From Paragordius varius (Eukaryota > Animalia > Nematomorpha), in contig OZ176057.1 of NCBI GenBank assembly GCA_964247055.1, positions 2,046,001-2,110,000 on the forward strand: DNA of 64,000 nt, written 5' to 3'. Within the stretch, counting starts at the first letter, position 1; every line of letters starts with the position of its first letter. The position numbers and the translations under genes were made by a program. The notes beneath the pieces are model-generated. The model was not told the origin of the DNA. It saw only the letters and a list, made by a program, of their open reading frames with translations, and did no database searches. Of this stretch, positions 20,967 to 44,161 are shown piece by piece.

Positions 20967-21655
20967 TATTACAGTTATCAAACTTCGAGAATCCAAGGGG
21001 AAGCCCTAAAACCCCATCGAAATTAACAGCTAAGATTTTTTATATTGTTTAAAAATGTTTATTTGAATCATGCGCCTATATAACTAGAAAATGTATTAAA
21101 ACATCTAATATATTTTTAACGATATTCAATTTAACATCGCTCGGTACAAACTACCCCAAAAGGGAAAGTTATAATAAAAAGATTGAAATGAGAATTTAAT
21201 AATACATTTTCACCTTTTTTAAATGTTTTCTCTAACTAAGTATTTTGATCATTTTTATTTGAATTTGTATAAATATTATGTTTAAAACACCCTTAAACTA
21301 ATATAAATTATCATATTGGTTGTGAGAAAAAAATGTTTTTGATTTTTATCACACATATTGAAAATGTTTTAAACACATTTACATACAAGTTTATTTTACA
21401 AAATTAAAAACTGATTTTTCCGGATTTTTTCTTATGTTTTAATAATTTTCCATCCCGGACCGCAAAGTAGATATTTATTAGGTCTTAATTAAAATTTCAT
21501 TATGAATTATGAGAATAAAGTTTAATATTTTAAAAACATTATCAACAACTATTTGAAAGATATAGATAGTTAAATGAAAATGGCTGAATTTTAAAAAAGC
21601 TTGTTATTAATTACACCATCATTTCAAAAACATAATTTATTTTTCAGATAAATTT

Positions 21656-22326
21656 ATACCATTTGCACTACAAGAGTGTCCTTGAACACTTTAAGTTGGT
21701 CCTTGAACATTTTAAGTTGGTCCTTTAACAGTTCAAAATGGTCCTTGAACATTTCAAGTTGGTCCTTGAACACTTTATGGTCCTTAAAATTATAAATTTT
21801 GTAACCATAATTTTTGCATTTATATTTTTATTTTATTATTTCTAATTTTCTTTATTTATTATATATTTATTCATTTACAAATGAAAATTCTTATGAAAAA
21901 CCACTGTTTTGTTTCAAACTATTTTTATTCAATTGAACAAAATTATTGACTTTTAAATGTTTTTAATGAAAAATTTTAATTAACTAGAAAACTTATATAT
22001 TTTTTCATTTCGTGTTAAAATCTTATAAATATAAAAAATTATATTAAGAAATTAATAAAGATATACGGGTTCTCAAAGATTAAAAGTTAATATCGATTTA
22101 AAATTTATATTAAATAATAGAAAATAGGTTAAAAACAATAAAATAGATGAATTATTTACGAATTGATGAATAAAAGTTAAAACAAAACAAATAAGTCAAA
22201 GGACCAACTTGAACTGTTCAAGGACAAACTTGAAATGTTCAAGGACCAACTTGAATTGTTCAAGGACCAACTTGAACAAGGACCACCTTGAAGTGTTCAA
22301 GGACACTCTTGAAGTGCAAATGGTAT
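21656..22326. repeat. Foldback element, subfamily B1 (long TIRs built of 21-bp units AAGTTGGTCCTTGAACATTTC)
   Basis: ATACCATTTGCACT / AGTGCAAATGGTAT termini; about 5 units per arm in inverted orientation; AT-rich spacer shared with the copies at ~51092-51510 and ~52105-52595. Confidence 0.85.
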
Positions 22327-23286
22327 ATATTATATACTATTACCGTCCATTTATTTACAAGTACATATATCACATTTGCATAATTAAAAAGAGTTTCGAT
22401 AAAAAACGATAACATCACATTGTTTTCAAAGATAATTAAATATTTAGGCCAGAATGTGTCCATGACGTAGCTAGCTGGCCGCATGCTGCCCTCCAAAATA
22501 TTTCTCCCGCTCACAAAAAAATCCAAAATTTATAATTCTGGAAAAAATTATTTTCGTAAACAAATTTTCTTATAGCAAAAAATGTTAAAAACAGAATTGT
22601 TTTTATAGTCTTAGGTCTAAAATCTAATAAAGTATCATAGTCCATATATTATTGAATTTCGGCCCACTGGATTTGTCCGAAAAGATATTTGTGTTGGACA
22701 TCCTTGATTTAGACATTAGAAGAATTCATAGTTGTTTTTCGGATTCCATCTTGAACGCTTAGCGCGCTGATTTGTTTAAGCCGTTTGAGATGTACTAAAA
22801 ACTTAGAAGCATAAATTATTTTAAATATCATTTTCATAGAAATTTTGAGATCTTATAATAATAAAACCAAATTCACCACAACCATTAGAGTCATAATGAA
22901 AATTTTTATCTCATAAAAAAACAATCAATAAACATCAAAGAATTTTTTTTTGCAAATTAAATATTTAAACAATATAAACCGCTTATTTTATTTATAAATT
23001 GGCTTTCAAATTTAACGACGTGTATAATGATATCGTTACAGTTGTTTCGCTTTTCATATTCTTACCCTATTATATTTAATTATGAAAAATATATTATTTA
23101 AGGGAATTTTTCATATTTATACAAACTTGTTATAATTTTTAAGATAACTAACATCTTCCTATTTCTGAAAATTTTTATCTTAACACCTGTTTGGCGTTTT
23201 TGTTTATGTTGCATTTTTATGGTGCTAACTTATAAAAGCAGTATCATTCAACATATGCTTTATACTATACCGTCTTAAACTGTAAT

Positions 23287-23599
23287 TTAATTTAGGGTAT
23301 GTGACAAATTAAAATAAAATAAACGATATACCTGATATATTTCTTGACTCAGGGGTATGAATGTCACAAATATGGCACCAATCCAACACATTGCGAGTGA
23401 TATGTAAATCCAAGCCTGAAAAGCTTCATACGTAAATTCCCGTAAAATGCAGAGAAGCCCGGGGATTATTAGTAGGAAAAGGCTTAAACTTATGCAAGAT
23501 AATATGATGGCCAGCCTGCGTGAACGCTTAAACTTATTTTTGACTTGCTCAAGTGTTGGCCTATCTATCAGATAATGGCAATCCTGCAAATCGAAATCT
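23287..23599 (-). CDS. DUR3: DUR3 exon 12 (last two TM helices; 3' end uncertain, see findings)
   Basis: gtgtag|A GAT TTC acceptor, phase 2; DFDLQ..IIPG..AWIYISLAMCWIGAIFVTFIPLSQEI. Confidence 0.88.
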
Positions 23600-26500
23600 C
23601 TACACAAAAAATAATTTATTAAAGAGATGAGAATTTTTATGGCATTACATGCGTGATGGGATAATGTGCAAATGTGTTTAAAACAGTGCCCGCGGGCTGC
23701 ATGCCACCCTAAAAGTATATTTTTATGCCTGAATTATTTCATAATTTTTTGATATAATATACTTATTTTGAGTATAAATACTCCAAAGTATCAAACAACT
23801 ATGAAAATTTTATTGGCATGGCATTAGGAACAAAAAAATATATTTTGGCCCTAAATATTTTAGGTGAGTGTCACGGGTATAATTGATAGGGCGACAGACT
23901 CTCACGTTGTATATGTGAAGTGCTGAATTTCGCTACCATTACTGTCAGACCTGGACAAGAGAGTATTAAAGCTTTCACAAGTCCTTACCCTCTAGAGAAA
24001 AAAAGAAATCTAATTTGTGTATTTATTTAAAAACCTTTTGTGTAAACATTCCATATTATGCGTCAACAATGGATTATTTGAGATGAATGAGTCGAAATAA
24101 ATGAAGGTTGTTAACTTATAAATATAAATCAGGTAATACGGATTTTTATTAATTACAGTAAAATTAAAATTTTACAGGCAAAACGTATACATATAAAGAT
24201 AAATATTTTCTTAAAAAAGACAACCATAATATACATAATAAATCCTAAATTATTTAATTCCAACTGTAAAATAATAATTGATTGAGTACCAAATTTACAT
24301 GTGTTTTAATACTTTGCAAGAAAAATTAAGTTTAAAAAAGCACAATCTTAAAAAAATTGTTGTACCACACAGTTTCAATTTTTTATAGATCTATTAATCA
24401 ACGTCTGTTTATTCAAAATATGTGAAAATTTACTTGTCATAAACATCGACCCAGGGGGAAAGGGGATTATCTATATCCCGTACATTTTCCCAAATCTCAA
24501 TACTCTCATCTTTTGTGAGAGATTTTTGAAGAGCACGTGACCTGAGCGTATTTGAACGCCTAAATTTTTGCCGACCTTTACAGCAGCAATCCCAAACAAT
24601 CCATATCCAATTAATTTCAATCACTTTGAAGCGTTGAACTATAGTTATCACTATGGTAAGGAAACAACCAACACTGATGGAAACGACATTACCCAAAAAC
24701 ATTGGGAAAATTTCACCTGGGACATTATGATGAAATGTTTTAAAATATGTATTGGTTAGAAATCAACATTTATATTATTTTATATTGTTTTGAATTACTG
24801 TATGAATAAATACACATTGCTAATGCTTCATTAATTAGTGCCAGATAGCATAAAAGCAACGGCATTATTATTGGATAATAGCAGTTAAAAGCGAAAAAAT
24901 TTACCAAATATTTTCTTTTGCTTTATATCTGGTGGTATATTATCAAAAATATAGCAATGTATATTTGCTTATATTGTAATGCAGTTTTAAATAAAATTGA
25001 ATCATGTAATTCATTTTATACAATATAATACTTGAATGTTGAAAAAAGGAGTGTGGTCGACCAATACTACTGCTGCTATTTGACGAAAAGTGTGATGATT
25101 GTTGTTTCACATCTTCGCTGTATTCAGACCAGGTAACAAGCAGCCACGTGAGTAATCCAAAAATACAGCCAAACGTTCCACTACAAAAGACCGCTAAGCC
25201 CGTCACCTGACTCCAAAAAAGACTGAAACAAATGGGAAATATGGCACTCCCGATGAGAATTCCCATCACATTATAAAGCCAATTGAGGTTAATCTATGTA
25301 TATTCGTATGTATACGGCGTGTCCACATAAAAAATAACCTATATTCAGATATAGCAAGATTATCATGGTGCATTTTGGCCGTTACGAGCGATATAAGAAA
25401 GTAATTTACGATTTTATGGTACTCCGTATCAAAATATGGCAAATTTCCTTTTTTTAAAAATTTTTTTTTAGCCAAATCTAAATGCTACATGCCAAAAAAT
25501 ACCAGTAAATACATAAACTACATATACCATTTACAGTTCAATTTCACCCTTAAACAATTCAAATTCACCCTTGAACAATTCAAATTGACCCTTGAACAAT
25601 TCAAATTCACCCTCGAACAATTCAAATTCACCCTCGAACAATTCAAATTCACCCTCAAATAAAAGTTTTGTTTTAAATTAAAATAATACTAAAAAAATAA
25701 TAAACTATACCATAAACATATATTTCATATTAATAATGAATTATACTAGTTCGAAAACACATAATTTATTTTTAGGGTGAATTTGAATTGTTCGAAGGTG
25801 AATTTGAATTGTTCAAGGGTGAATTTGAATTGTTCAAGGGTGAATTTGAATTGTTCGAGGGTGAATTTGAATTGTTCAAGGGTGAACTTGAACTGTAAAT
25901 GGTATATAAAAAGTAAAACAATAGTTTTAAATTTTTTTTTATCAGGCTCCTAAAGTAACAAATTTTTCGCTTTACCAAAATGGGTTAGTTATTTTAATGT
26001 TAAAGCAAAAATGCCGTAGTCGTGAGATAAAAATTAATATATGCTAAATTTTAATATCATCCAAAAATATTTTTAATAATCATTTAAAAAATTCGATTAT
26101 TTGCAAATTTTCGTTGAAGCATAATATTTTTACCTCAAAATTTGGATTAAAAAAAGTGTTCTTCTTCGAATTCGTTAAAAATAAATTCTATATCACCAAA
26201 TTTAAAACAAACCAACCTTTATATTAAAAATCTAAAGCGATAAAAATAATCAGTATCATATAATACCCCTTTTTTACCATGCCTCAGATAGTAAAGCACT
26301 CTATAACAAAATTTTGTCAAAATAAAATTTTTAAAAATTATGCTTAGAAAATTTAGTTGAGAAAATTTAGCATATTTTTTCGTAATCCCGGCGTTTTTGC
26401 GTTTATTTTAAGGGAATTAGTTCACCTTAGAAGGGCAAAAAAACTTGGAATTTTCAGAGCCTTAATAAATTTTTTGGAATTGTTTTGCTTTTTATATATA

Positions 26501-29500
26501 GTTTGTAATATATTTTATTATTTTTTGGAATCAACTATTTAGCTTTGGCAAAAATAAATTTAAGTTCGCAAATGTTGCCATTTTCTCATATGGAGAGCAC
26601 TTTAAATAACAATTTTATATAAATTATAGGGCCAAAATTAAAAGAACCATGATAATCCTGATACATTGTTAGATTATATATACATATCTTAATAAAATTT
26701 CGTTTAAAAGGTTCCATGTCAAACTATTTGGACGCCATTTTTATTTTGAAAATTTTTGCAAAATATCGTGTTCATTTATTTTTTAAGGTGTATTATTTTT
26801 CAATTTAGCCAATGCACACATGTCACGCTGACTAAATTTTTACCTTTGAGTTTTACCTTAAAATAGGTAATATCAAGTGTTTTTTAAAAAAAGTTTTTTA
26901 TGTAATTCCGGTTTATTGATGTTATCTAAGTGCAAAATTTTGTCATGGTTTCTTTTCCTTCCATAATTTAATTATTTAATTTTAAACAAGCCTGGGGTAT
27001 CCAACTATCCCAATTTGATTCGAAGGACTATAATAAATGTGTTGTACCAAGTGTCAAATATATTGTAATATTTTAATATGTATAGCTAAGAAGGTACCAA
27101 CTAGATTTTTTTTATATTTTGTCAAAGCCTATATCAATTATTAATTAAGCTAGGTAGTAAAATTTAAAGAAATAATAAAACGTCGGAATTTGTTCGCTAA
27201 ATTTTTTTATAAATATGTTATATGTTAAAAAAATAAAATCCATATTAATTTTTATCCGCTCAAATAATTATTCCATTATATAAAATTGAATAAAACAGTG
27301 TCGGAATAAAATATTTTAAATTATTTCCTAGATTATGATATATTTTAACGAGATTTTTATAAAAGGATCATTTAGTTTTACCAAAATTATATTTAAAAGT
27401 TTTTTTGAAATATTTCGATATAGATATAGAGTAATTATATACTTTAATCATTCGCAAGACCTAAAACCAAAAGCAACATGTTAATAATGGTATACTTTTT
27501 AATCAGAATATAATTATAAGGATATTTTTTATACTTCCTGATTCAGGTTTATATAAATTTGAAGTAGCCATCATTTGTTGTAAAATTAATGGTAATTTAT
27601 GGTAAAAATAGTTAAAAATAGTTTTAATATGTTAGAAAATTTTCAATAAATTTTTTTCAACTTTTTTTTTATAAATTTAAACCTGAACTGCGTTTAGGAA
27701 ATATGTTAATGGTAGGATGGAAAAAGCTACAAAAAGAGTAATCCATGATCTTCGATTTTCCATATCCAAATAGTAAGTTCTGTAAGGACCATGAACTTTG
27801 CATTTAAACACGATGGGTGAAATCATGCCCGTATTTTTATTTCGATTTCTTTCTCGCAAGCTTTCAATATTACTAATATAAGAAGCATTCATATAATATT
27901 TAAATATTTTTCAAGTTTTGGCACACCCATGTTATGGTTTTATTGAAAATAAAAATCGATATGAACTCATAATTAATTGAAATTGTATGTAATATTATTT
28001 AATACAATGGAATAAAAGTTACATTTATTTTAGAAAGCATAGATACTTCAAATTGGGGTATCTAATACCCCAGACTATATTTAAATTGATATTTTTAATA
28101 AAATACTGAAAGAAACGGTCCCAATTAAAATTTATGCTATCTTAATAAAAATTATATAAATTCGAAATATGTGAAAAAAATTAGTTTTGGATAGCTTCAA
28201 ATTATCTCGACGCCATTTTTATTTTACAACATTTTTGCAAATCTTGTATATATTTAGAAGTTAATATTATAGCTCATTATTTTTTTAAATCACAACTAAA
28301 TTGATAGAACATATAAAGTGGTTTATTTTGAATTATTAATTTAGCTAATGCTACAATTAAGTATGGCTAAATTTATAACTTTTGGTTTTGCCGAAAAATG
28401 AGTTATATCAATTATTTTTAAATATATTTCGGTTCTTAATTTATGTAAGTGCAAACTTTTGCCATGTTTTACATTCATTGTTTATTTTTCCAATTTAATT
28501 CAAATCGTCTGGGGTATCCAAACGACCCCAATTTGAATTTAAGGACTGAAACGAATGTGTTGTATTAAAATAAAGCGTATTTACAGTAAAATTTAATATT
28601 ATTTGACCAAAACGTAAAAATATAAGACAAATATTTTATTCTACCAACCATACTTTTTGATTTTTTTAAATACTCATTATTTTAAACTTCAAACTTACGA
28701 TTTAAATTAAATGATAGTGATAGGATAAATTAAGGTTTAAAAAAGTATTGTTATATTTTGGAAAAAAATTTGTCTTAATATTACATTTTGTTGTATAATT
28801 TCAATTTTTACTCTAATATTCGCCAAAAAAATTAAAAATTGGGGGATTGTAATTTAAAATATCCATATATAATATTAATATTTTAAATTATCTTTAAAGA
28901 CTTAATAAATAATCATTTTTAAGACATTTTTTTCAAAATTTATGCATCTCGTTTTTCAAAAACAAAATTTTTTATCTTACATTGGTTGTTTAATCTTTTT
29001 ATAAAGGGTGGGATTCCGGATTTGGATCGTATCATGAAATAATTTATAATCACAATATTTATACTTCGAGGTAATCTGAGGCGATTTTTTTACGTAAGGC
29101 TTTGTGTACAACTAATGATTTTACAGATTATTAGAAACTGGATTTTGTCATTAGCGCATTTTCTTGCCCCAACCAACACCGCGAGGAGGTGGAAATAGGA
29201 CTTTGTTGGCCTTGTTTAATCTCTTTACGGTATAAAAATATTTTAGGAGCCCAAAAATTTAATCAACGTTTCGTTTGAGGTTAAACTATGTGTAAAAGGG
29301 CACTTCTAGTGTTAATAGCATTTATAACATATAATTTATAGCTTAAGTGTAATTTTTATTTAGGTGGAAATTAAACATTAGAGTTTAAGTTTTAATTATA
29401 GATATAAAGCGTATAAACTAAAAAACAAATATATTTTTTAATGGAATAATTTTTCTTACTTTGATTTTTTTACGTAAAATAATTAATTTTAATTTACAAA

Positions 29501-32500
29501 TATGTAATTTAATGCATTTTCCCTGTTTCGCAACCCCAAAACGATTAGTTGTAATTGAAAAGACAGGGTTATAAAAAATGATTTTTTATAAAAAAACTTT
29601 AATTGTAGTTTAATATAAAATTTCGTCAATATCAATTTAAACTACCGTAAATTAAAAAATCTATTAAAATGATAAAATATCTTTAAAAATAGCAAATTTA
29701 AAAATAGTACATTAACATATCCGCAAAAGGAATTTATTCACTCTTAAGTTACGGATTTGAAATTGTCCTATTCTTAAATTTGCTATAATAAATTTTTTAT
29801 GATTTTATACTCATAATAAAAACAATTTTATAAAAAAAGCCACCATATAAAACAGAGTACAGTATAAAAAATTTGATTAAATTTAAAAATGTAAAATGCA
29901 AAACACCTGTCATCTGTTGTACAATCGGTACAATGAGTTTTACTGACACAAACACACTTATCACGGGCTGAGGATTTGCGCCCCCTTTGTTTTCCACACA
30001 GCAAACAGCTGTTATTATCATTGGTTCTTCTATACGGCTTTAACACATATATAAATACCGTATGAATAAGTATACATTATATACAGTCATGTATACTTTA
30101 TTTTATCAAAAAATTTATTTTCTTTCGTTAAATGGCATAGAGAATGGAAAAAACAAGAGCTCTATGGTATTAACAATATTTCATCAAAAAAGTAAAGAAT
30201 TACCATAGAGCTCTTGTTTTTTCCATTCTTTACCAAATATTAATTTATGCCCATTTAATGAAAAATAAATGATAAAATAAAGGATACATGACTGTATTTT
30301 ATTTATAATTGCATTAGAGTAAACATTGAATTAACAGACAAAACGGTATTATATAAAGTAAATCTCAAATTATCCTATGAAATCATTTAAGTACAATTAT
30401 AAAATACGTTGATTGTGTTACCATCTTTCATTTTTATTTTATACTTTGCAAACTTAAAACAATCATTTATAAATTAAAAAAATAAGATTCAAACAGTAGT
30501 TTTGTAGAAAAAAATATTTATATGCCTTTAAATTTTTACGTTTCCAAATTTCGATTTTTACTGTACATAAAGAAAGCAAAGGGAAATTGGCTAATATATA
30601 GTAAAAAAAGAAACAAAAACCCATGGGAAAATTCTGTTGCCCTTTACTTTTTATGCTATCTGGTGGCGAAATCAATGAAATACTAGCAATTAAGGTACAT
30701 ATACGAAATCAGTAATTATTCAAAGTGTATACAGACAATGCGCTGAAAATTCAAAAATGAAATAATTTGCCTAAAAATAAACCATATTTTTTTAACCTTT
30801 TTAATCTTTAAACGTATAATTCGTTTTGGAATGATAAATAATGTAAATTGGTACTCTAGAAGAATATATAATTTAAAATTGCATTAAACAGGTGTATGTG
30901 GAAATAATAATGTTGAGAATGGTGGTTGGGTGATTGTTTATACAATAGCATATGGGTAAAAAACAACAAATGGTTAAAATTACAATATCTTACAACATTT
31001 AATTTTATTTAATTATAGACAAAATTTCTTTTATATCATACGCTACTATATTAATGAATGCCGATGCCCAACAATAATCTAAATTATTCAACATTTCAAG
31101 CGCATACTCTAATTCATGTAGGAAATATTTATGGTTAAAGAAAGTTATGGTTGTTTGTTTTTAGAAAAAATTATTGTATTTTTTACGTTATGTCGTCCGT
31201 ATACTTAAATTTTAACTGTACAGAAAAAATTGAAATTATACGGAAACGTTAAAATATAAAAACAATTTTTTTTTCAAAAGACAACCATACTTTTCTTAAC
31301 TTATTGTTTCGAATTGCATATTATAGAATTGATATCTATATTGGTGACACAATAAATATTTTTTAAAATTGTAATTATATAATTTGTATGAGAAAAATTA
31401 TGGTTTAAAAAAGTATGGTTGTCTTTAAAAAAAATATTTGCCTTTATATTTTAACAATTTGTCCGTATTTCAGTTTTCATTGTTAAAGTATGGTTATTAC
31501 CTTTAAATAAGTTTGAAAAATATCATAGGTTATGATGGAAGATACGGCTAGTATGTTGGAGGCACCTGTAGAGGTTATAGCCATGAGAAGTAGGAGGTAT
31601 AGTAGAAAAGCCCCTTTCGGTCCCAATATATAGGTAAACACTAGCGGTAAAACTAAACCTACATACCAAAAAATAATTTTTAGACCTTATTTATGCTCCA
31701 AACTTTAACACTTACTATTTACACCCCTCAAATTCACATTATATATTTTTTTGAATATAAATACCTAATTTTTTTGTCATTTTATTTAAAAATGAAATAA
31801 GATTTAAAATTAGCATGATAAAGAAAAAATAATCAAATATGCACATGCCATAAATTATTATTTCATATCAATAAGGATAAAATTAGCCCAAAAATACTTA
31901 ATTTGTTTTTTAGTTTGAATTCGGAATATTCATGGGTAAATTTAATATGTTCAAAGGTAAATTTGTGGTGTAAATGGTAAAAATTTTTTTAGACAATTCA
32001 CTAATTTTAATTATTGCTAATACAATGTTATAAACTAAAAATGAAAGTGAATAAAAGTAATAATTACCAATAAAAAATAAATTAAGAGATATAAAATAGT
32101 CTTCCATATTATATCGTCCATAATTTATTATAAATATTAGCATTCTTCTTGCATAATTTAGTTTGACCCCTCCACGTTCTTTACTTATTAAATATTTTTT
32201 ATATTTGAAAAAACTATTTTTAACAGCTATCATATTAGTATTTCTGTTCTGACCTCTGTCTATATCCTGATCGGAGAGAAACCGTTTTCCAGCCCTAAAT
32301 TCCAGGGATCTATAACACAAGCCTGCAGCAGTTGCCAGCGTGAATGGGATAGCAAACCAAAGTAAACCGCCAAGGACAAAGCCTAAAACAGCATTTCGCG
32401 GTTTACATGCCACAGCACAATTCCAATACGATTGATCAATGAATACTGCTCCGAAATTACCTACGTATGCGATTATTATATCAAAATATTTAGGGTTCAT

Positions 32501-35500
32501 GAAAAATTACAGTCTGTGGATATGAATTAGCCTTATCTTTATTTAAACTAGTTAAAGGGCCTTTTAATTAGCATGTCAGTAGCAATATGTATGAGATTTT
32601 TCGTTTATATTAGTCCAAAATTTAAATGAACACTATATTTTCTGTTTACAGTTTTTAAAAAATGTAACTAATTAAAACGAAACATCTATGGCTACTGACA
32701 TGTAAATTACATACCCTTTTATCCATTTAAAATACAGATATGGCTTATTAGTGCACGTTACTTTAAAATAATGAAAACTAATTTAGAAAGTTTTTTTTGA
32801 AGTAAGCGCGTGAAATTCAAGGCATGGAATGTTATGTTTAAAAGAATTTTCAATTTTAACATATAATTTTTATAAGGGGTAGAGATTAATACGTATTCTT
32901 TTACAGTAAAAACTGAAATTATACTGACAAAAAGTAAAAATATAAAGACAAATATTTTTTTATAAGGCAACCATACTTTTTAATCTTGTTTTTTTGAAAT
33001 ATAACTCATTGTTTAAAAAGAAAAAATGTAAAATAAAGATATATATGACTAACACAATCAATTCTATATTTTACAGTTGTAATCAAATAGTTAATATTGG
33101 ATTAACGTTTAAAAAAGTATGGTTGTATTTTTAATAAAAACATTTGTCTTGTATTTCGCGTTTTGTCCATATAATTTCAATTTTACTGTATGTTGAGCCC
33201 CAATTTTTTAAATTTGATTTAGATTTCCTAAAAAGCGGTTATAAATAGTAACAAAGTATAATATATAATTTAATATTTTATTTTTAAATTTTTATCAATT
33301 TAATAAATTAACTCTTTTCAATTACCTTTTGGAGTACTTTTATTTTCCAGAACGTTTTCTAATTTGAATATCGTAGAAATATGAAAGTGATTAAGCCAAT
33401 TTTAAAATATACTTTCTTTAGCCTTTTAGACGCATTATAGATTTTTTTTAAAAAATATAAATTGAAAAAAATGCTCTTCTCAAAATCTTTTGCCCCATCT
33501 ATTTCTATACTTTTTTAATCGCTAAGCAACAGGCAAATAAATATATATAATGATTAGAAAATGTAAATAATTAACTTTAAAAAGCTTTCAAGCTACATTT
33601 TGCAGGAAAAACTTGATATATTAATTTAATATCAGATGATCGTTTCAAGTGTGTTTAGGGCTCTCTTAATTTTAGACTCTAGAAGTTATAAAACCGTAAA
33701 AATTATAAGCTTTATCTAACATGAGAAGAGTGTTTGATAATAAATTTTAACTAAAATAAATGTCAAAACTCTAGTTTTACAAAATTAAGCTCTAGGATAT
33801 AAAATTATCCCAAAAGGAAACTATGACAGAAAAGGTAATGAAGTGTTAATAACGTATAGTCTTTATTTTCGTTTGCATTAACTGGATATAAATATAAAGA
33901 TGGGACCAATATAAGCATCATTGAAACAGATACCTGCGTAACAATTGTAAAAAATAACAAATAAATTAAAATCTACAATTGCAAAATTCAATTTACAAAT
34001 TCTTGGTATAATTTTATACTAAAATTAATACCAATTTTCCCCTTATAAAATATTTTAAATGTTCATCCAAAAATATATCAATTGTTTCGATATTTTACAT
34101 TGATTGGTAAAAATTTAATTATAAATGCCATTAAATATATATTGGATTTTATAAAGATAATCCGTTCTTTGTGTTTATTTCCTAAAGTGGCCCGCGAAGC
34201 CATTTTTCACCCCTGGTCTTAATATACAATAGAATCTAAACCAAATTTTAGGTAAAAATTAATCTTTGTTATTTCTTTATAAAATCAGTTTCATTTTATG
34301 TTTTGGCATTGTTTATAAGGTAGCAAAAATTAAAATTATATTCACTATGTATACCTATAACATTGATTATGCCAAACTGCAAACCAGGTAGGGAAAGAAG
34401 CGTCAAAAGACTTTCATGATAATTTTCGGATGGTCCTTGTAGACAATACAAATATTTGTACATTTGACGTATCCCTCCTGGTATATAATAGAAAAATTAC
34501 CTAAAAATGAAGTTATCATTTGAGTTAAACAATTTTTGGACTGCTATCTACCACATAAGATATTTTTGATGTGTCAAATAAAATGCGAAGTATAAACCTT
34601 ATTCGTAAATTTTTTAATTACTAAAATTATTATATATATATATATATATATATACAGTTAAAATTAATTATACGAACAAAACGTTAAAATATAAAGACAA
34701 ATATTTTTATCCAAAAGACAACCATACTTTTTGAAATCTATTTTCCTATTTAGCTTAGTTACAATTGAAAAATATAGATTTTATGCTGTTAGTGATATAT
34801 ATCACTATTTCTTCAATCGATTCGAATTGGGGTATCTAAATACCTCAGATTTAATTAAAGTAGTATTTTCAAAAAAATACAGAAGGAAACTGTCCCAATA
34901 TAAATTTATAATCCTAAAAGGAATTATATAAATAAGCCAAAATATCTTAATATTCTTTTGAAAAAAAAGTTCGACGTCATTTTTATTTTACAAAATTTTT
35001 GCAAAATATCGTCTTCAAATAATTTTAAAGGTAAATATATAGCTAATTTTTTATTTAATTAACATCTAACATTGATAGAAATAGAAAAAATGGTTTATTT
35101 TGTATGCTTTTTCAATTTTACCATTGCAGACATATCTCGTTGACTAAATTTTCCCCTTTTTGGCTTAAAATAAGTAAAAACAAGTATTTATAAATTTTTC
35201 TATATATTTCGGTTTATTAAAAGGGCAATTTGCCATGGTTTCGATTCTTTCCATATGTTTAAATAATTTAATTTTAAACAGGCCTGGAGTAATCAACTAC
35301 CCCAATTTGAATCGAATGACTAAAATGAATGAATTGTATTCAAGTGTTAAACAATGATTTATATTAAAAAAATTATTTTAAAATTATGGTTGTCTTTTAA
35401 AAAAAATTTTTTTATATTTTTACGTCATGTCCGTATAATTTCAGTTTTTACTATATATATACATATAAGTGTGTAATACTAAAAAAATTTTACGTTTTTG

Positions 35501-38500
35501 AAAATGTTTTTTGGAACCAAAACCGCGGTTTTAGACAGTTTAAAAAAGGTAATTTCCAAAATTGTTGATTCAAGGGTATATATAAATTAAGTGTTTGATT
35601 TTTCATAAAGCTTGTAAATATCTTTACGGTTTATATGGACATATTGTAACTATTTGCATTGAAATAAATGGCTATCGCTAATTTAAAAAAAATGTGCAGA
35701 AATTGCTGTTTGACTGAAAACAAAGAGACCGAAACCTAAAACGGTTTTGGCAAAATTATCTTTGAAACTTAACCAAAAGAGTTCTTTCTTTAATTACCCC
35801 GTAAATATATATTTCGAATTGATTTATTGCGATTAAAATAACTATAAAAGTTTATATATATTTACCCAAAGGAGTTGCCATACCACGAGCATATATGACA
35901 TGACTAACATACAGAATGATTATAAAGATAAGGGATGCATTAATGTACGAAACATATATAGTGGCTCCTAGACCCCCAACAAATGTATAGCTACCCATTA
36001 TAATTATCATGAGAAGGCAAAATCCAACCACTCCGATATCGCTTATCAGGGATTTGGTTGCTTGAAACCCGCCTATTTATCGTTTAATAAATTATATAGT
36101 AAAAATTGATGCATTTATACAGAAAAAACGTAAAAAAGTACAACAAATGTTTTTAAACAAAAGACAACGATATATTTTTCTTGAATTGTTATATGGGTTA
36201 TGAAATAAACATCAGAAAAGTGAATTGTAATACACCCAATTTTATAGAGTAAAATTATAATGTATATAAATGATGTTAGAAAAATAAGGGTTTTAAGTGT
36301 GTTTGTCTTTGTCAAAAATATATTTGTTTTTATATATTGAGTTTTAACTGTATACTACCGTGTTAACTATGATATGTCATTAAAAGCGACCTTACCTTTA
36401 AATTTTGTAATCATCAATTAGTAAATACGTGTCCTATTAATATAGTTATTTCATATGTTTTAGTGGATTAAACTGAATTTTAAAAGGCGTTAGAATGGAT
36501 TAAGACGCTCGACTTATAAACTATGGATGTGAATGTGGCAGAATATAAATCAGAGGTCTCTAAAATGCGGCTCTCTGATATGGTATGGTTCGCGATAAAA
36601 TTATCAAATAACAGTAAAATACCATAATTACCAAAAATATCTACAAATCCTGGTATAATTACTGATTCTATTAAATTTTTAGGTATGTTTTTCCAAATTT
36701 TGGCAACTAACCATCAAAAATATGGGGAAATATATCGTAGTTATTTTGGTCTTATTTTTTACAGTCTAGTTTAGGTCTAAAAATTTAGAAATGTCTATAT
36801 ACTTTTCGAATGCGGCTCGCCACTTCATTTAAACTACACAAAGCCATTTGCGTTAGACACCCCTATTTTAAATCAATAAACTTTTTGCTTGTAACATTTT
36901 ATCCTTTAATTGGCTCTCAAAATATCACTAATAACGTAAAATTCTCAAATTTTAAAAAAAGAGACATACTAAATGGTTTTTTATTGCAAAAAAGACATAC
37001 TTACTCAAATATCTCAATATTGTTCAAAGACTAAATATTTGTTAGAATAAAACAGTAAATTATATTTAGAATTTTCGAACTGCGTGCTTCTTGTATTAAT
37101 GAGGTTAACCATCCAAGCATATAAGTTTTTAAACAAAACAAAAATCGATATAAAAATAAATAATTATCTCTATTAATAATTTACACCACTCAAATTTCTA
37201 TTTAATCTTTGTAATTGTAAATTTAGCCTTTACTTAATTAGTAAACAATCGCGTTTATATTATTAAGATTTTCATATCTTAAAGTAGCCTAGCCTACTAT
37301 GTTTTAAAACTTTCATATGCCACATTGGAAAAATTTTTTGTCAACAGTTGCACAATTATAGAATCATTATTTTCTAAGAATAAAAATATGCCAAACGTTT
37401 TAAAAAATTTTGAATATCGGAAGTTAAATATTTTGCTAAAGAATGAATCAAGATTTTATTTAAATTAGCGAATTTTTAAGTATAAGCCCTCGATTTTAAA
37501 TTAATTCCATGATAAATATGGAAAAGTATTATTCCCTCAGGTAAACTTTTGCATTGTATTGGGTTAATATCTTTTCCAAACAATTTAACCTTAGATGTCA
37601 TCTTAAACAATGTAGAAACGGCCAGCATGATAACATTATATAGAGAGGACCGTCAAATATTATTATTATGTTTTTAGCATACCTTTTAGTCACATCAGAG
37701 GATTTCTGATGTTAGATTTGCAGTACCTGCTCCTACAGGTTTTTATTCTTTAGCAAAGCGGTTTTGGTCAAAATTAATTGGATAAAATAAATTAATTTTC
37801 AAGTTCGAGTCACAACCGCGATCATGGTCTTAATGCCATAACAAACGTTTGTGAATTTTTTTAAACCAACTTCATATCCATATTTTGCCTCCGAACGCTA
37901 TACTTGTTTTAAAACTCCTTTTTTACCATTTTATAAAAGAATGCATATATTTTAAATGAAGCATTCCAACAAATTACCTAACATTAGCATACCAGTGACC
38001 AGAGTATTGGTTAATAGGGCAAATCCACAATACAAAATATGACAATAGGGGCCAAATCTAACGCCTATAACCTGAACAAACGTTTTAGCCCCCGGAGCGA
38101 TAATTTTGAATTGAAGCGCTAGATTGGAGAAAAGGATTAATTGAACGCATGCGCCCGCGGCATACCAAAAAGCTCCACTGACCCCATACTATACATATAT
38201 ATATATATATATATATTGTTAGTTTTTCATTAAGTATTCCTAGATAGCATATAAAGCAGGAAAGAGAATTATTATGGGTTAATAGGAATAAAACCTGAAA
38301 AAATAACTTTGATTCAATGATATTGCCCGATTTGCTGAATATGCTATCTGGCGAAAAATGAAAAACTAGGATTATATATATATTTATATATATATATTTA
38401 AAATAATTAGAGATGGTATACATAGTAGGTAAGGGGCCCGATTTTTATAGTGTCACTGTCAATTAGCCCTGGGCAGGCGGCAGGCGAGTGTTAAAGCTTA

Positions 38501-41500
38501 CACTAGTCTTCCTCATACAATTTAAGTCCTTATTTTTTTTTTATAAAAGGTATAGTTTTTATGAAAATAATTAAATTTATTATTTTACTTAGATAAATAT
38601 ATAAACATTATTTTAAATACAAACAATAAAATGGATCACATATTAAATTTATTTTTCAATATTTAAATAATATATAGACATGACAATAATTAATCCCCAT
38701 TATCATGTAATTTTTAAAACAACCTCTTGGGCTCATATTGATTATCGTTTTCCTTTCAAATAATTTCATAGTTTTTGTTAAATTCTCAAGCAACGTATTT
38801 AAGAATAAGGACACTAGATAATAACTCATATAAATTAAGATCAGGAGCCTCGCAGTTATAAACTGCTTTTTAGGTTTAGAAACATATTTTTTTTTAAAAT
38901 TAAAAAATTCTTATGTAAAAGGTACCTTAACCGTTACCGTCGTAGATTGTAAGAGAGTTGCGGCCCAGGTCCAATTGGAAACCAAGAGCGAAACTATAAG
39001 GCTAAACGTAACTTTTCGTCCAGCATCAAAGGCCCGATCAACATTATTCTACAATATGATATATAATTAATCAAAGCATATCATTTTATTCGAGGACCTC
39101 TAAAAACTTCCCAAGTTTAAAATAATGTGTTTTTATAAAAATATCATATATTTTATTTAATATATTTATATTTTATTTTACTAATTATTAATTGAAAAGC
39201 TTAAGATCAATTTTTTGGACATTCAATAAAATCACAAAACCGTATGTCGTTCACATCATATTAAAATAAATTATGATTAATTTAAAACTTAAAGCCCTAA
39301 TTTTACACCTTATATACCTGTCTAAACCAGTTAGGGTGAAATAAATTAAGATATATGGAAAATCTTTGAAATCTTACTTGAATTAAATTTATTATTTATT
39401 ATATTTTTGTGATTTCCACCAAAAAATACTTTAGCGCATGTGCTTTATTTTTTCCGATTTGATGAATTCTTAAATCACTAGGCTTAATAATTCGAACTTA
39501 TGATTTTTCCGTGTATTAAAATATAAAAATATACTTTTTAAATCAATTTTGTAGCATCTAAAATTTGGCATTTTTAGTTTTAACAAAATTGCAGTGAAAC
39601 TAAATATTCATGTGTAAATATAATATAAAAAGTTTTAAATAAATTTAACTCAAATATCATGCCAATATGGCTGAAAAAGGTCTTTGTCCGAGAACTTAAC
39701 TTGAATATTAATACATAAGTTGTTTTTATTGAATCAAATATTATACTTTTATATTAGCTAAGATGGCTCCCAAATTCAATTAAACGCCTGATTTTCTAGT
39801 TAGTTTATCAAAAATCAATAATATATGGTTTTATTTACCTTTTAGAAAAATTGGCATTCGCTGAGATTTTTTACATTTATTTTGGATTAAAAAATTATTT
39901 TTAAAGGTATTTTAAAATGTAAAATTATTTGAGCGCTGCAATTTAACATGCGATATCATCAACATAATATAATCTATACCATAAGCCCTAAACATTGTTA
40001 ACATTAAATTTTTTGAAATTTTTTTATAGTTTTTTAGATATTAAGAAATTGCAAGAATTTTCAATTAATGGCATTTATAGTTAATGCGATATATTAATAT
40101 TTTAATGATTTATGTTTTTTGATTTAATATCTAGTTGACATTTAAAGCAATTAAACTTATTAAACGTAATACCTTGTTGGCTTTTAAGAGTTGTCAATGT
40201 TATAATAGATATTAAACAGGTTGCTTAAACAATTTAGTAGAATTGTAAAATTTATGTAAAAATTATAACCGCATGCATACTGGGGATAACATTAAAATAA
40301 ACTTCTTTTTTCATTAATGTTTAATTAAATTAATTAACGACAAATCAAATCTTGACCGTTAAAATGTCTGAAATTTTTCTGTATTAAAAACTTTTAAATG
40401 TAAAAATTTAATAGCGACTTGACAGTGAAATAATCAAGGTTGACTACGTCTATACAACAATAAATCATTTTTAATAAATACTTCAAATCACATTTTTATG
40501 AGTATCAGCGCATTAAAATAATTAAATATTTATGTTTTATGTCATATCCTTACTGAAAAGATAATTAATTATATTATCCTATCTATATAATTAAATTAAA
40601 TTTTATATCCTAAAATCCCCTTTTTTAATTCCCGATCCAATGCTTCTACACAAATGCACACTCCTTAAATAAATTTGCGTTCAACGTATGATATAACCTT
40701 TTGTTTTTGACTGCTTAAATATCTCTTAGTAATTAAAATTTATATTTAAGTAAATGGAAAATCTGCTTTTAATTTATATTTAGGTGCTAATCGATATATT
40801 TTAACACAATTTTGGCCTCGATTTTAAAATAACAAAAAGGTTAATATGGGTAATCAATCAGCTTTATTACGCTAAAATTACGGTTATTTTTTGTAAAATA
40901 TATTTGTTGATTGGAAACATTTAACACTTGGATACAACACATTTATTTTAGTCCTTTGATTCAAAATGGGTTAGTTGGATACCCCAGGCCTGTTTAAAAT
41001 TATATACTTTAAAAAATATGGTAGGAATAAAAACCATACCAAAATTTTGCACTAATATAACATTAATAAACCGAAATATATAAAAGATTTTATTCAAATA
41101 TACTTAATAATACTTATTTTAATGTAAAACCCATAGGTAAAATAGTCAACCTAACATCTGTGCATTGGCTAAATTGAAAATACAAAATAAACCTCTTTTT
41201 CTATTTTAATCAATGTTATATGTAATTTAAATAAAAAATTAACTATAGTTTTAACGTTAGAATTAAATACAAGATATTTTTCGAAAATTTTGTAAAATAA
41301 ATATGGCGTCCAAGTAGTTTGACCAGAAACTTTTTTTTAAAACGAAATTTAATTGATTTTTTTTAGATAATTTTTATTAGGATAGAAGCATAACCGTTTC
41401 CCTCAGTAGTTTTTAAAGATTATATAATTAAATTTATTCTGGGGTATTTGGAAACCCCAATTCGAATCGAAGTGTTATTAAGCACAACGTTTTGTTTTAA

Positions 41501-44116
41501 ACGATAAAATTTTATTAATAATTTATTATTGATTTGGATGATGTGTGTTTCAAATTATTCTTAGACCTACTATTTCATACTAAATAAATGAAAGATTTTT
41601 CTATAAATGATATTTAATAAAAGTCATTGTTTTAAGTTAAAAATAGGGAATAAAAATGTAAAAACAATTCCCATACTTAATTTATATTTCAAATTGTTAA
41701 AAATTGTTTATGTGGAAAAAATCAAGGTATGAAAAATTATAATTGTTTGTTGATATTTGTCTTATTTTACATTTTGTCCTTTATGATTTCAATTTTAACT
41801 GTATATTTATTAAAAGTTCGTTCATCTGGCATAAAGTGGCTGGTATTTATTTCAAAGTTATAACTAAAAATAATATATCTCAACCAAACATCATTAGCCG
41901 TCAAATGTAAAAATGTCAATTCAAAACTTATAACTTATTTCGTATATGATTAAATCTAAATGTTGTATATTTATAATTTCGACCTTGAACTAGGTAAAGT
42001 AATTTTTCTTGGCAGCGAGATCGATAAAATAATTGTGAAATAAAAATAATTGCTTTCCCCGAAAAAAAAGTTTTTTTTGATACTAATAATCCATATGAAG
42101 TTGCAATTTTTTACTTAATTATGACAAATGATTGTGTTGATACTTATTTTATCTGTCACCTACCTAGTTAAAACTTAACTGTAATTTTATTTGTGCTTAA
42201 AAACTCTATAACATATTTAACACTGTTTGGTTATATAAAACCTTATGAAGAGTAGGCTAAGAGATAATTCAGAAGATTATCAATAATCTCAATTATTTTT
42301 TATTTTATAATGGATCACTTTTAATTTTAAAGCCATTGTATTATGTAAAGCCATCGAAAATTATTGTCACAGACAGTGTTTTTATAGAGTTTTCATTGGC
42401 TTAAATATGTAATAAAAGATATTATTGATTAAAAGAAACCTGACTTAATATTTTGCTAAATACCTGATTGCGTATTAAACAATAAATGTTTAATTTCTAA
42501 CAGTATTGTTATTTATACAGTCTAAAATATGTGAAACTATGTATGTTTCTAACCAATATACTAAACATTCAATGCAAATCATATTTAATTGCGCTCAAAA
42601 GATTAATAAATTTAAATTTTTATTTATAAAATGTTTTTTACTAACCTATTTTTAATAATCTAATAATTATTTCCTTTTTGAAAAATTGTATTATTTGAAT
42701 TTTTATTGCATTTGCATATATTAAAATCATGTTTCATATAATCAATGTTTTGGTAGATATTAAAACTAAAAATCGCTTTGAGACGTAAAATTGGTATGTA
42801 TGGTATACATTCATTTTCAATAATAATTACATTTAAAAATCATTATAATAATTATAAATTAAACAATTTAATTCAATGCAATTCAATTATACACTTAATA
42901 TATATGGACACTCTATGTGTCCGTTACATTTTCATAATCTAGCTGCCATTTTTGTTTTTTTATACAAAAGCAATTTTTAAATTAACCATGAAATTCGTTC
43001 TAGACATAACCAATTATAAAAAATGATTATTAAAATTAAAATATTTTTACGATATTTGGATTGTCGAAACATCCGTAATCATTTAGATAAAATATTAAGC
43101 GTTATTTGAGGTAAATTTATATAAGAGATTTGAGTTCAATCCACAAAATTTAGCAGGTAAATTTGACATTACTTGACAGATAATGATTTTTCACAACTCC
43201 CGACCTTTTTTTAAACTCCCAAAAAATGGAATTTAACAACATTTTTTGAAGCATGGTGCTTTTGCCTTAAAAGAAGCTCCACTCTATTAAATTTCCCTTG
43301 ACATTTGTATGTGATTATATTATTTGTTGGCCCTTTTCAATTTATTCAATGAAAATTGGGTAAATAAAAATAACCATCTTACCTGATACATATACATTTC
43401 CCCAAAAACTTACTTTTGATAAATTACACATTCACATGTTCAAAATAGTATAGCTATATGGAAATTTAAATTTTAAAAAAATATCAAAGCCACATGACTA
43501 AAAAGAATGATTTCAAAATTAAAAAACCAATTTTCAAAGGCCTAACTTTCATTTCTGGCGCCCCTCCCCCTCCATGCAACCAACCCCTTGCTTGCATTAT
43601 AAAAAAATAATCAAATTCAAACCCTGGTCATGACCACTGTTCATAAATGGGTGATTTTTTTAATGTATGATTTACAATAATTGCTTTTAAATACCTATTT
43701 TTTGAGATAAAATTAAATTTTATAAAATACGGCGCTCTCCTTCAACTATGGCGCCCTGTGCATTTACTCCCCTTTCATTCCCGTTAGCTAAGCCTTGGCC
43801 ATTTTTATGAACAAAAAAGGGATTAACCTAATTTTTTTGTTTAATCTTTTTTAATCAACAGTTTGCTCTAAGCCATTTTTCCAAAGATGCTCAAATTGTC
43901 TTAAAATCGGAACTGAAACTTAAAATTGTCATAAATAATCATAATAACGTTCCTTAAAATATGTTGCACATTATAAAAAAAGTGTCCTTTTATTAAATGT
44001 TACTAAAAATGACCTTATCCTATTCCCCAAAAAAATATTGCGGTAACGGTTTCGGAATTCAATATGTCCAAAATAATTTTTTATGCTTTAGTCTTCAAAT
44101 GTATATGAAATACATA

Positions 44117-44161
<45 letters not shown>

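What the first reader, a model, noticed from the sequence alone, without database searches (positions are those of the whole stretch)
27683..30037. Eight-ligand Cys/His (zinc-finger-like) module inserted in a cytoplasmic loop of the urea transporter
Seen: exons 8-9 encode C-x2-C-x13-C-x-C-x5-C-x2-C-x28-C-x2-H (CLLC..CVC..CTDC..CKVH) between the YDIFQTY helix end and the next TM helix. The Y(ITYD) to Y(WLY) distance is 122 aa here versus 49 by my recalled UreA numbering, i.e. ~73 extra residues. Established: this loop is short and cytoplasmic in fungal and plant DUR3 and other SSS transporters, so Cys would be reduced; eight ligands fit two Zn sites as in cross-braced fingers. Inference: a metal-, redox-, lipid- or partner-sensing module grafted onto the transporter. 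Also seen: an in-frame alternative acceptor (ggtccttacag|, 27779) would delete 31 codons including CKVH, a possible splice switch. I believe similar loops occur in other invertebrate DUR3-like proteins but cannot verify that or whether they are described.
Basis: partly seen in the sequence, partly recalled or inferred. Interest (0 to 1): 0.75.

Follow-up and report, generated by a model that had tools for sequence, protein, structure and literature searches.

The report
Zinc-finger-like loop in animal DUR3 transporters
A DUR3-type urea-transporter gene, in what is probably a horsehair-worm genome, carries a roughly 75-residue module with eight invariant Cys/His residues inside one cytoplasmic loop; the module is shared by DUR3-like transporters across bilaterian animals, is absent from plant, fungal and algal DUR3, and is not described in any domain library or paper I could search.

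Summary
Minus-strand exons 8 (30037-29907) and 9 (27872-27683) of a 12-exon DUR3-like gene encode C-x2-C-x13-C-x-C-x5-C-x2-C-x28-C-x2-H between TM8 and TM9. This linker is about 10 residues long and intracellular in the solved Arabidopsis DUR3 structure.

The module is not peculiar to this genome:
- It occurs in every member retrieved from an animal-only DUR3-like clade (amphioxus, hemichordates, echinoderms, molluscs, annelids, nemerteans, brachiopod, flatworm, rotifer, tardigrades, chelicerates, crustaceans, nematomorph).
- It is absent from classical DUR3. One branch with 100% support separates the two groups.
- In 73 aligned loops, the only invariant columns are the eight proposed ligands.
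- AlphaFold2 models the loop confidently (pLDDT 81-95).
- Spacer behaviour (C4-C5 fixed at 5; C2-C3 and C6-C7 variable) and weak FYVE_2/rabphilin similarity favour a two-zinc cross-brace finger.
- No Pfam or NCBIfam model, PDB or ESM Atlas fold, or searchable paper covers it.

Metal binding and function remain untested. No RNA data exist for this organism. The proposed splice switch at 27779 has no support: it is a by-product of the AGA codon for a conserved Arg.

Verdict: a real, ancient and apparently undescribed domain.

The parts
23287..44605 (-). DUR3-like transporter gene. 12-exon model giving an intact 848-aa ORF: exons 44605-44228, 39048-38926, 38188-37978, 36072-35866, 34477-34355, 32460-32254, 31658-31501, 30037-29907, 27872-27683, 25293-~25071, 24716-24434, 23599-23287.
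   Evidence: tblastn with Gordionus P0152; junction refinement; assembled ORF without stops, 53% identical to P0152. Junctions 4>5 and 10>11 are uncertain.
31501..31658 (-). Exon 7: TM8, ending ...SSIITYDIFQTYLK in phase 0. Contains N451 (31557-31555) at the position of AtDUR3 E402.
29907..30037 (-). Exon 8 (131 nt): start of the module, with ligands C1-C6 (CLLC, CVC, CTDC) and the basic C2-C3 spacer GKQRGRKSSARDK.
   Evidence: The Gordionus equivalent exon is also 131 nt, in the same phases. Skipping exon 8 alone gives an immediate TAA.
27873..29906 (-). Intron 8 (2034 nt), AT-rich, containing repeats found at very high depth in the DNA run of organism B.
27683..27872 (-). Exon 9 (190 nt): C6-C7 spacer, ligands C7 and H8 (CKVH), the conserved HGPYRTY helix start, and TM9.
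   Evidence: The acceptor at 27872 is positionally homologous to the Gordionus acceptor ((R)DIES versus (S)NIES).
27749..30037 (-). The Cys/His module as protein (aa 470-554 of the model; 85 aa spanning intron 8). Net charge about +10 (19 K/R, 9 D/E); 7 of the protein's 27 Cys.
27779..27781 (-). The AG lies in the AGA codon of the conserved Arg. No evidence that it is used.
27848..27860 (-). Two further in-frame acceptor candidates (27860, 27848). They would shorten the C6-C7 spacer to 24 or 20 residues while keeping all eight ligands. Their signals are weaker than the one at 27872.

Best explanation
Exons 8-9 encode a small folded metal-binding domain, most likely a two-zinc cross-brace finger. 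Site 1 would use C1, C2, C5 and C6; site 2 would use C3, C4, C7 and H8. The domain is inserted in the intracellular TM8-TM9 linker of a DUR3-family (SSS/LeuT-fold) transporter. It was acquired once, before the radiation of bilaterians, and has been kept in all retrieved members of the animal DUR3-like clade; this window holds the nematomorph-type copy. The last ligand pair caps the cytoplasmic extension of TM9, and the first residues follow directly on TM8, so the finger is rigidly mounted on the two scaffold helices of the transporter. Inferred function: a mostly basic cytoplasmic platform lying next to the inner membrane leaflet, which docks a partner protein and/or anionic lipid and so controls the transporter's activity, assembly or trafficking. 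Shown here: sequence, splicing logic, conservation, topology by homology, and a confident predicted fold. Inferred only: metal identity, cross-brace pairing, and the docking/regulatory role.
For: 1. The eight Cys/His are the only invariant columns in 73 loops whose mean column identity is 46%. They are also invariant in 9 full-length proteins from 8 phyla.
2. Spacing is rigid where a cross-brace needs it (C4-C5 = 5 in 73/73; x2, x1, x2, x2 within the pairs) and variable where RING/PHD/FYVE fingers vary (C2-C3 from 11-18 up to about 50; C6-C7 16-28).
3. AlphaFold2 gives the loop alone pLDDT 81.8 and pTM 0.64. C1-x2-C2 lies between two beta bridges, and C5-x2-C6 and C7-x2-H8 each sit at the N-terminus of a helix (H40-51, H67-84), as in treble-clef sites. 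In the full-length model the loop scores pLDDT 81-95.
4. The only recurring similarity is to FYVE_2/rabphilin-3A fingers, with ligand-to-ligand alignment of C1, C2, C3, C5 and C6 (Pfam in 12/73 loops, best E 0.014; PDB 1zbd_B E 0.33).
5. The TM8-TM9 linker is intracellular and TM8/TM9 are scaffold helices in solved AtDUR3 (PMC11840088). The alignment to 9j7c breaks exactly at the loop.
6. A single origin: module and no-module sequences are separated by one branch with 100% support.
7. The module has a positive net charge in 64/73 loops (mean +4.2; about +10 in the window).
8. Transcript-derived proteins (TSA entry GFUD01005233 and 'merc' entries) contain the complete module.
Confidence: 0.6

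Rival explanations
1. The module does bind metal, but as two sequential sites (C1-C4, then C5-H8) or as zinc knuckles, not as a cross-brace.
For: The C-x-C second pair and the lack of any significant match to RING/PHD/FYVE models or folds leave the pairing open.
Against: The C4-C5 linker, which would join two independent fingers and should tolerate length change, is fixed at 5 in 73/73 loops, whereas C2-C3 and C6-C7 vary. Pairs 3 and 4 each start a helix, and pairs 1 and 2 lie in knuckle-like turns, which is the treble-clef 1+3 / 2+4 logic.
Confidence: 0.17
2. The Cys/His set holds a redox-active iron-sulfur cluster, for example a 3Cys-1His [2Fe-2S] at C3/C4/C7/H8. That would make the transporter redox- or iron-responsive.
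For: One putative site is 3Cys+1His with a C-x-C pair, a ligand set used by some Fe-S proteins (own knowledge). Faint Fer4-type Pfam hits occur in 6-10 of 73 loops (E >= 0.28).
Against: Those hits are at noise level. The pair spacing and helix-capping geometry resemble zinc treble clefs. No CDGSH or ferredoxin signature is present in the sequence.
Confidence: 0.08
3. The cysteines are lipidation (S-palmitoylation) sites or a cysteine string that pins the loop to the inner leaflet, and not metal ligands.
For: The loop is juxtamembrane, cytoplasmic and basic. The same protein has a CCC motif after a hydrophobic stretch in exon 11.
Against: Palmitoylation sites do not need an invariant His, strict x2/x1/x5/x2/x2 spacing, or invariance of all seven Cys across phyla. 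A confident compact fold is predicted.
Confidence: 0.05
4. Gene-model artefact: exon 8 and/or the first part of exon 9 are not in the mature mRNA of this organism, so the real protein has a short loop.
For: There are no RNA data for this species. A few database models lack parts of the module (Pollicipes P0016, Helobdella P0231, and P0191/P0214/P0228/P0186).
Against: Exon 7 ends in phase 0, and exon 9 is only in frame after the 131-nt exon 8; skipping exon 8 gives TAA at once. Both exons are open, are 52-62% identical to Gordionus, and have the same length and phases as the Gordionus exon. Transcript-derived homologues include the module.
Confidence: 0.03

Closest known systems
Plant/fungal urea-proton symporter DUR3 (solved: Arabidopsis 9j7c/9j7d/9x5u, maize 9vim)
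   Same: Same family and fold: phmmer E=1e-101 and Foldseek E=2.5e-31 with TM 0.81-0.84 by target. The urea-binding Trp dyad (W95/W338), Y315 and D312 equivalents are conserved.
   Different: The TM8-TM9 linker is about 10 residues in DUR3 (NPRATGRQILK) but about 75-85 here, with eight Cys/His. The animal clade is separated by a long, fully supported branch. In the window and in Gordionus, the E402 proton-site residue is Asn. Urea transport by this clade was not tested here.
Cross-brace zinc fingers: FYVE_2/rabphilin-3A type (PF02318, PDB 1zbd_B), and more broadly RING/PHD/FYVE
   Same: Eight ligands in four pairs. The spacing C-x2-C-x13-C-x(1)-C-x5-C-x2-C-x(16-28)-C-x2-H fits the cross-brace template, and C3-to-C5 is 8 positions as in rabphilin. 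Lengths vary in the same two spacers. Weak ligand-to-ligand alignments exist.
   Different: No significant sequence or fold match. The second pair is C-x-C and the last ligand is His. No FYVE signature motifs (WxxD, R(R/K)HHCR, RVC) are visible in the sequence. The module is embedded between two transmembrane helices rather than forming part of a soluble protein.
Cys-rich zinc-binding domain of DHHC palmitoyltransferases (own knowledge, not tested here)
   Same: The architectural idea: a two-zinc Cys/His domain in a cytoplasmic loop between two transmembrane helices of a polytopic membrane protein.
   Different: No DHHC catalytic motif, no sequence similarity found, and a different host fold (LeuT-fold transporter).
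Long Cys-free insertions in the same loop of some non-animal DUR3 homologues (P0041, P0045, P0062, P0116; source organisms not determined)
   Same: Same insertion point, directly after the TYD(I/V)Y...NP motif, which shows the TM8-TM9 linker tolerates large insertions.
   Different: These are about 100-200 residues long, begin NPELK..RR..IFY, contain no Cys/His pattern, and are unrelated in sequence.

Membership tests
DUR3 urea-proton symporter family | Significant full-length sequence similarity to experimentally characterised or solved DUR3 | tested here: met
   P0152 (53% identical to the window protein) against 9j7c_A: E=1.1e-101 in two stretches flanking the loop. Window exons align to P0152 throughout.
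DUR3 urea-proton symporter family | LeuT/APC fold with DUR3-like helix arrangement | tested here: met
   AF2 model pLDDT 87.5, pTM 0.86. The best Foldseek matches are the four DUR3 entries, ahead of the SGLTs.
DUR3 urea-proton symporter family | Urea-site residues W95, W338, Y315 and the proton-site residue D312 (AtDUR3 numbering) | tested here: met
   All are present in the window and in P0152. D312 and W338 equivalents are conserved in 72/72 of A3, W95 in 70/72 and Y315 in 68/72.
DUR3 urea-proton symporter family | Second proton-site residue E402 (TM8) | tested here: not met
   Asn in the window (N451, 31557-31555) and in Gordionus (N460); Glu in 70/72 family members. In AtDUR3, mutating E402 causes partial loss of function (PMC11840088).
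DUR3 urea-proton symporter family | Urea transport activity | not testable with these tools
   Needs yeast dur3 complementation or an oocyte uptake assay.
Sodium:solute symporter superfamily (PF00474 / TIGR00813) | Match to the family model above its curated cut-off | tested here: inconclusive
   P0152 scores 111.9 bits against TIGR00813, below the 184-bit cut-off, and has no PF00474 hit. Most other clade members carry a precomputed PF00474 hit. One window exon gives a weak SSF hit, E 0.0027.
Cross-brace zinc fingers (RING/PHD/FYVE superfamily) | Eight Cys/His ligands in four pairs, with a fixed short central spacer and two variable long spacers | tested here: met
   The eight columns are invariant. 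C4-C5 = 5 in 73/73; C2-C3 and C6-C7 are variable.
Cross-brace zinc fingers (RING/PHD/FYVE superfamily) | Significant match to a family profile (e.g. PF02318 FYVE_2, PF01363 FYVE) | tested here: not met
   Best E 0.012-0.014 at 14-16 bits against a 27.2-bit cut-off; 12 of 73 loops match. The PDB profile search gave rabphilin-3A at E 0.33.
Cross-brace zinc fingers (RING/PHD/FYVE superfamily) | Interleaved (1+3, 2+4) ligand pairing in three dimensions | tested here: inconclusive
Fold searches gave no zinc-finger match, and the knuckle half was barely tested.
Cross-brace zinc fingers (RING/PHD/FYVE superfamily) | Binding of two zinc ions | not testable with these tools
   Needs ICP-MS or PAR assay, or a structure.
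FYVE domain proper | PI3P-binding signature motifs WxxD, R(R/K)HHCR, RVC | tested here: not met
   None is present in the window loop or in the A2 consensus. The C2-C3 spacer is basic (GKxRGR...RDK) but differs from these motifs.

The most novel reading that the evidence does not exclude
The module is a previously unrecognised family of cross-brace zinc finger that exists only inside bilaterian DUR3-like transporters. It acts as a built-in cytoplasmic regulatory domain: by binding an anionic lipid or a partner protein, or by responding to zinc or redox state, it gates or relocates the transporter. This would be a mode of control unknown in the SSS/SLC5 superfamily.
Probability: 0.25. Interest if true: 0.75.

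Novelty: new variant of a known kind. Interest (0 to 1): 0.6.

Why it matters
Animal DUR3-like transporters are barely studied. Both recent DUR3 structure papers treat animals as having only SLC14 urea channels. Yet the clade is present from amphioxus to molluscs, arthropods and hairworms, and it is implicated in urea uptake in symbiotic clams (cited in papers found).

A strictly conserved eight-ligand domain mounted on the scaffold helices of a LeuT-fold transporter would be a new kind of built-in cytoplasmic module for this superfamily. It would also add a zinc-finger family that Pfam does not yet hold. The idea is directly testable through metal analysis of the loop, and through Cys-to-Ser or loop-deletion variants in the yeast dur3 complementation assay already used for AtDUR3.

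For genome annotation, the motif is a clean marker of the animal clade and a check on gene models. Several database models lose exactly the exon-8 or exon-9 equivalent.

Tried and rejected
1. Pfam on single window exons: nothing useful apart from a weak SSF hit.
2. Loop-only word search with P0152 found only the query itself, a sensitivity limit of that tool. The same search with the Lineus loop found 18 proteins, all DUR3-like, so no other host protein for the module was seen within that reach.
4. NCBIfam on the loop: nothing.
5. RNA evidence: no run on record as RNA holds the stretch, and three guessed-RNA runs laid no contig.
6. My first junction script, using short flanks, chose a spurious 29905^27795 junction that removes C7. 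I rejected it after scoring all in-frame junctions against the family HMM and comparing with the Gordionus intron position.
7. Acceptor-signal strength cannot separate real from alternative acceptors here: real acceptors have pyrimidine fractions of 0.41-0.71 and the 27779 site has 0.53.
8. The giant-clam DUR3-like paper (J Exp Biol 2018) is not held, so I could not check whether it mentions the Cys-rich loop.
9. Earlier scan notes near this place concern other features and did not bear on this one.
10. A possible small intron inside the 36-aa extra stretch of exon 11: no in-frame GT...AG pair was seen by eye.
Full report
**What is in the sequence.** The window is 26.6% G+C. Its minus strand carries a 12-exon gene that tblastn with the closest database protein maps from 44.6 kb down to 23.3 kb. 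Refining the junctions gives an intact 848-residue ORF.
- Exon 7 (31658-31501) ends ...SSIITYDIFQTYLK in phase 0.
- Exon 8 (30037-29907, 131 nt) and exon 9 (27872-27683, 190 nt) follow, then exon 10 starts INLNWLYNVMG at 25293.
- Exons 8 and 9 together are 321 nt, or 107 codons. Without exon 8, the reading frame runs straight into TAA.
The ligand codons lie at 30007-29921 and 27802-27791.

**Which gene, which organism.** A search of 1.84 billion representative proteins with exon 6 gave a best hit that is 72% identical over that exon. The hit belongs to Gordionus sp., a horsehair worm (Nematomorpha). Its full-length form P0152 (828 aa) is 53% identical to the window protein, and the two are sisters in the tree with full support. 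The window therefore most likely comes from another nematomorph; that is an inference from the nearest relative only. P0152 matches the solved plant DUR3 structures at E = 1e-101, and its AlphaFold2 model (pLDDT 87.5, pTM 0.86) has those structures as its best Foldseek matches (TM 0.81-0.84 by target), ahead of the SGLTs. The equivalents of the urea-site residues W95, W338 and Y315 and of the proton-site residue D312 are present.

**The loop is an insertion and it is cytoplasmic.** The residue-level alignment to 9j7c runs to the end of TM8 (...TYDIYRTYINP), breaks, and resumes at TM9. Classical DUR3 proteins have about ten residues there (NP.ATGKQILKVSR). The AtDUR3 paper numbers the helices TM0-TM14 with an extracellular N-terminus and lists TM5-TM6 and TM7-TM8 as extracellular linkers. 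That makes the TM8-TM9 linker intracellular, and the paper calls TM8 and TM9 scaffold helices that stay put during transport (PMC11840088). So the seven cysteines sit in the reducing cytoplasm. Their odd number, together with the invariant His, argues against a disulfide knot.

**Conservation.**
- Nine representatives from eight phyla align across the whole loop without rearrangement.
- A profile search then returned a block of animal proteins scoring about 1230-600 bits, clearly above fungal and algal DUR3 at 545 bits or less.
- The animals are amphioxus, hemichordates, echinoderms, molluscs, annelids, nemerteans, a brachiopod, flatworms, a rotifer, tardigrades, chelicerates, crustaceans and the nematomorph.
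- Of 128 proteins examined, 75 match a strict eight-ligand pattern. Most of the other animal-clade members are truncated or have a longer C2-C3 spacer but keep all ligands.
- The few real exceptions lose precisely an exon-equivalent block: Pollicipes P0016 lacks C1-C6, Helobdella P0231 lacks the whole loop, and four models derail after C6. They look like gene-model problems or, at most, isoforms.
- In an alignment of 73 non-identical loops with 46% mean column identity, the only invariant columns are the eight ligands. Nearly invariant are P4, L16 (C-x-L-C), D45, Y72, L76 and W82.
- A maximum-likelihood tree of 73 sequences needs a single change to explain presence and absence of the module: one branch, 100% SH-aLRT support.
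- No cnidarian, sponge or other non-bilaterian protein appeared in the animal block, but the search listed only the best 120 of 2297 hits, so the date of acquisition is 'at or before the bilaterian ancestor'.
- Some of these proteins come from transcript assemblies and contain the full module, so it is present in mature mRNA in other species.

**Exon structure supports the model.** The Gordionus locus (26.3% G+C) has an exon-8 equivalent of exactly 131 nt, with the same phases (...GAC AG|gt). Its next exon starts (R)DIES, corresponding to (S)NIES in the window. That favours the acceptor at 27872 over two other in-frame AGs at 27860 and 27848. Those two would give a family-typical 24- or 20-residue spacer and score higher against the family HMM (86.9 and 92.7 bits, against 80.3), but they have purine-rich acceptor contexts. 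All three keep the eight ligands, so the finding does not depend on this choice.

**What kind of module.**
- Pfam and NCBIfam have no model for it.
- The only recurring, sub-threshold similarity is to FYVE_2. It is found in 12 of 73 loops, with a best E of 0.014.
- The best PDB sequence match is the rabphilin-3A finger, at E 0.33. There C1, C2, C3, C5 and C6 align ligand to ligand.
- AlphaFold2 folds the loop alone with pLDDT 81.8 and gives it pLDDT 81-95 in the full-length protein, so it is treated as a domain and not as a linker.
- In the model, C1-x2-C2 lies in a turn between two beta bridges. C5-x2-C6 and C7-x2-H8 each sit at the N-terminus of a helix, and the second of those helices continues into TM9. 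A knuckle plus a helix N-terminus is the treble-clef way of building a zinc site (established knowledge), and it pairs 1+3 and 2+4, which is a cross-brace.
- Spacer behaviour agrees. C4-C5 is 5 in all 73 loops, whereas C2-C3 (11-18, up to about 50 in crustacean-type paralogues) and C6-C7 (16-28) vary, exactly as in the RING/PHD/FYVE template. Two independent sequential fingers would be expected to tolerate change in the C4-C5 linker instead.
- I therefore call it 'cross-brace-like, family membership unproven'.

**How it probably works.** Shown: an ancient, strictly constrained Cys7His module, cytoplasmic by homology, rigidly tethered between the scaffold helices TM8 and TM9. It is mostly basic (net positive in 64 of 73 loops, about +10 in the window). 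Inferred: it binds two zinc ions structurally and offers a fixed cytoplasmic surface next to the inner leaflet. That surface would dock an anionic lipid or a partner protein that regulates activity, oligomerisation or trafficking. Mounting on the static scaffold, and not on the moving bundle, fits docking better than direct gating.

**The proposed splice switch.** The AG at 27779 lies in TAC AGA, the codons for the conserved Tyr-Arg of HGxYRxY. Gordionus has TTT AGG at the same place, and exon 9 contains 4 such in-frame AGs in the window and 6 in Gordionus. Using it would delete two invariant ligands and lower the family-HMM score to 58 bits. No database isoform shows this deletion. Acceptor signals in this gene are too weak to exclude it, and there are no RNA data, so it remains unsupported but not disproved.

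**Novelty.** Seven full-text searches found no description of a Cys-rich or zinc-finger loop in DUR3-like proteins. The two DUR3 structure papers do not mention animal homologues, cysteine or zinc in this context. The one paper that characterised an animal DUR3-like protein (giant clam) is not held, so an earlier remark there cannot be excluded. The proteins themselves are in public databases under automatic names. What appears undescribed is the domain.

**Limits.**
- There are no transcript data for this species.
- There is no experimental evidence on metal binding.
- No model coordinates were available.
- The structure models are of the Gordionus orthologue, because a spliced window protein cannot be given by reference.
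- The word-based searches cannot exclude distant copies of the module in other proteins.

Noticed in passing
window 31557-31555 (exon 7, N451); Gordionus P0152 N460: The TM8 glutamate that both plant DUR3 structure papers propose as part of the proton-coupling Asp-Glu pair (AtDUR3 E402, ZmDUR3 E410; the maize preprint calls both residues 'perfectly conserved') is Asn in the window and in Gordionus, but Glu in 70 of 72 family members. This may be a nematomorph-specific change in ion coupling.
   Followed up: partly
window 24639-24532 (inside exon 11): A 36-residue stretch (VQRFKVIEINWIWIVWDCCCKGRQKFRR...) has no counterpart in Gordionus. It is open in frame and I saw no in-frame GT...AG pair. 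It is either a lineage-specific insertion with a CCC basic motif (palmitoylation-like) or an unrecognised intron.
   Followed up: partly
P0016 (Pollicipes pollicipes XP_037082167.1), P0231 (Helobdella), P0191, P0214, P0228, P0186: Database models of animal DUR3-like proteins that lack exactly the exon-8 equivalent (C1-C6), lack the whole loop, or derail after C6. These are probably annotation errors, though the Pollicipes case is in frame and could be a real isoform.
   Followed up: no
P0041, P0045, P0062, P0116, P0043, P0046 (representatives): Some DUR3 homologues from outside the animal clade (source organisms not determined) have an unrelated, Cys-free insertion of about 100-200 residues at the same point (NPELK..RR..IFY...). 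The TM8-TM9 linker is therefore a recurrent insertion site in this family.
   Followed up: no
tree: The animal clade contains at least two old paralogue groups. One has the tight 13-residue C2-C3 spacer GK.RGR....RDK (lophotrochozoans, ambulacrarians, tardigrades, nematomorphs). The other has longer, more variable spacers (amphioxus, arthropods, extra Owenia copies, Biomphalaria/Mya).
   Followed up: partly
window 48403-47037, minus strand: Open frames with integrase-like and zinc-knuckle-like sequence (…HVGHSGANV…, …VTDNASYF…PYHPRTNGLVER…), typical of an LTR retrotransposon pol gene, lie upstream of the DUR3-like gene.
   Followed up: no
window 25500-25980 and 21650-22340: Minisatellite arrays that read as FKFTLEQ / NLNCSRV repeats in several frames on both strands, within the introns and 3' flank of the gene.
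   Followed up: no
window 28011-28284, 28559-28695, 30066-30339, 31162-31572: Intronic segments are covered at very high summed depth (hundreds to thousands) by contigs of the DNA run of 'organism B', so they are dispersed repeats. A 212-nt contig of that run matches most of exon 9 and the adjacent intron (27628-27839) without a single difference.
   Followed up: no
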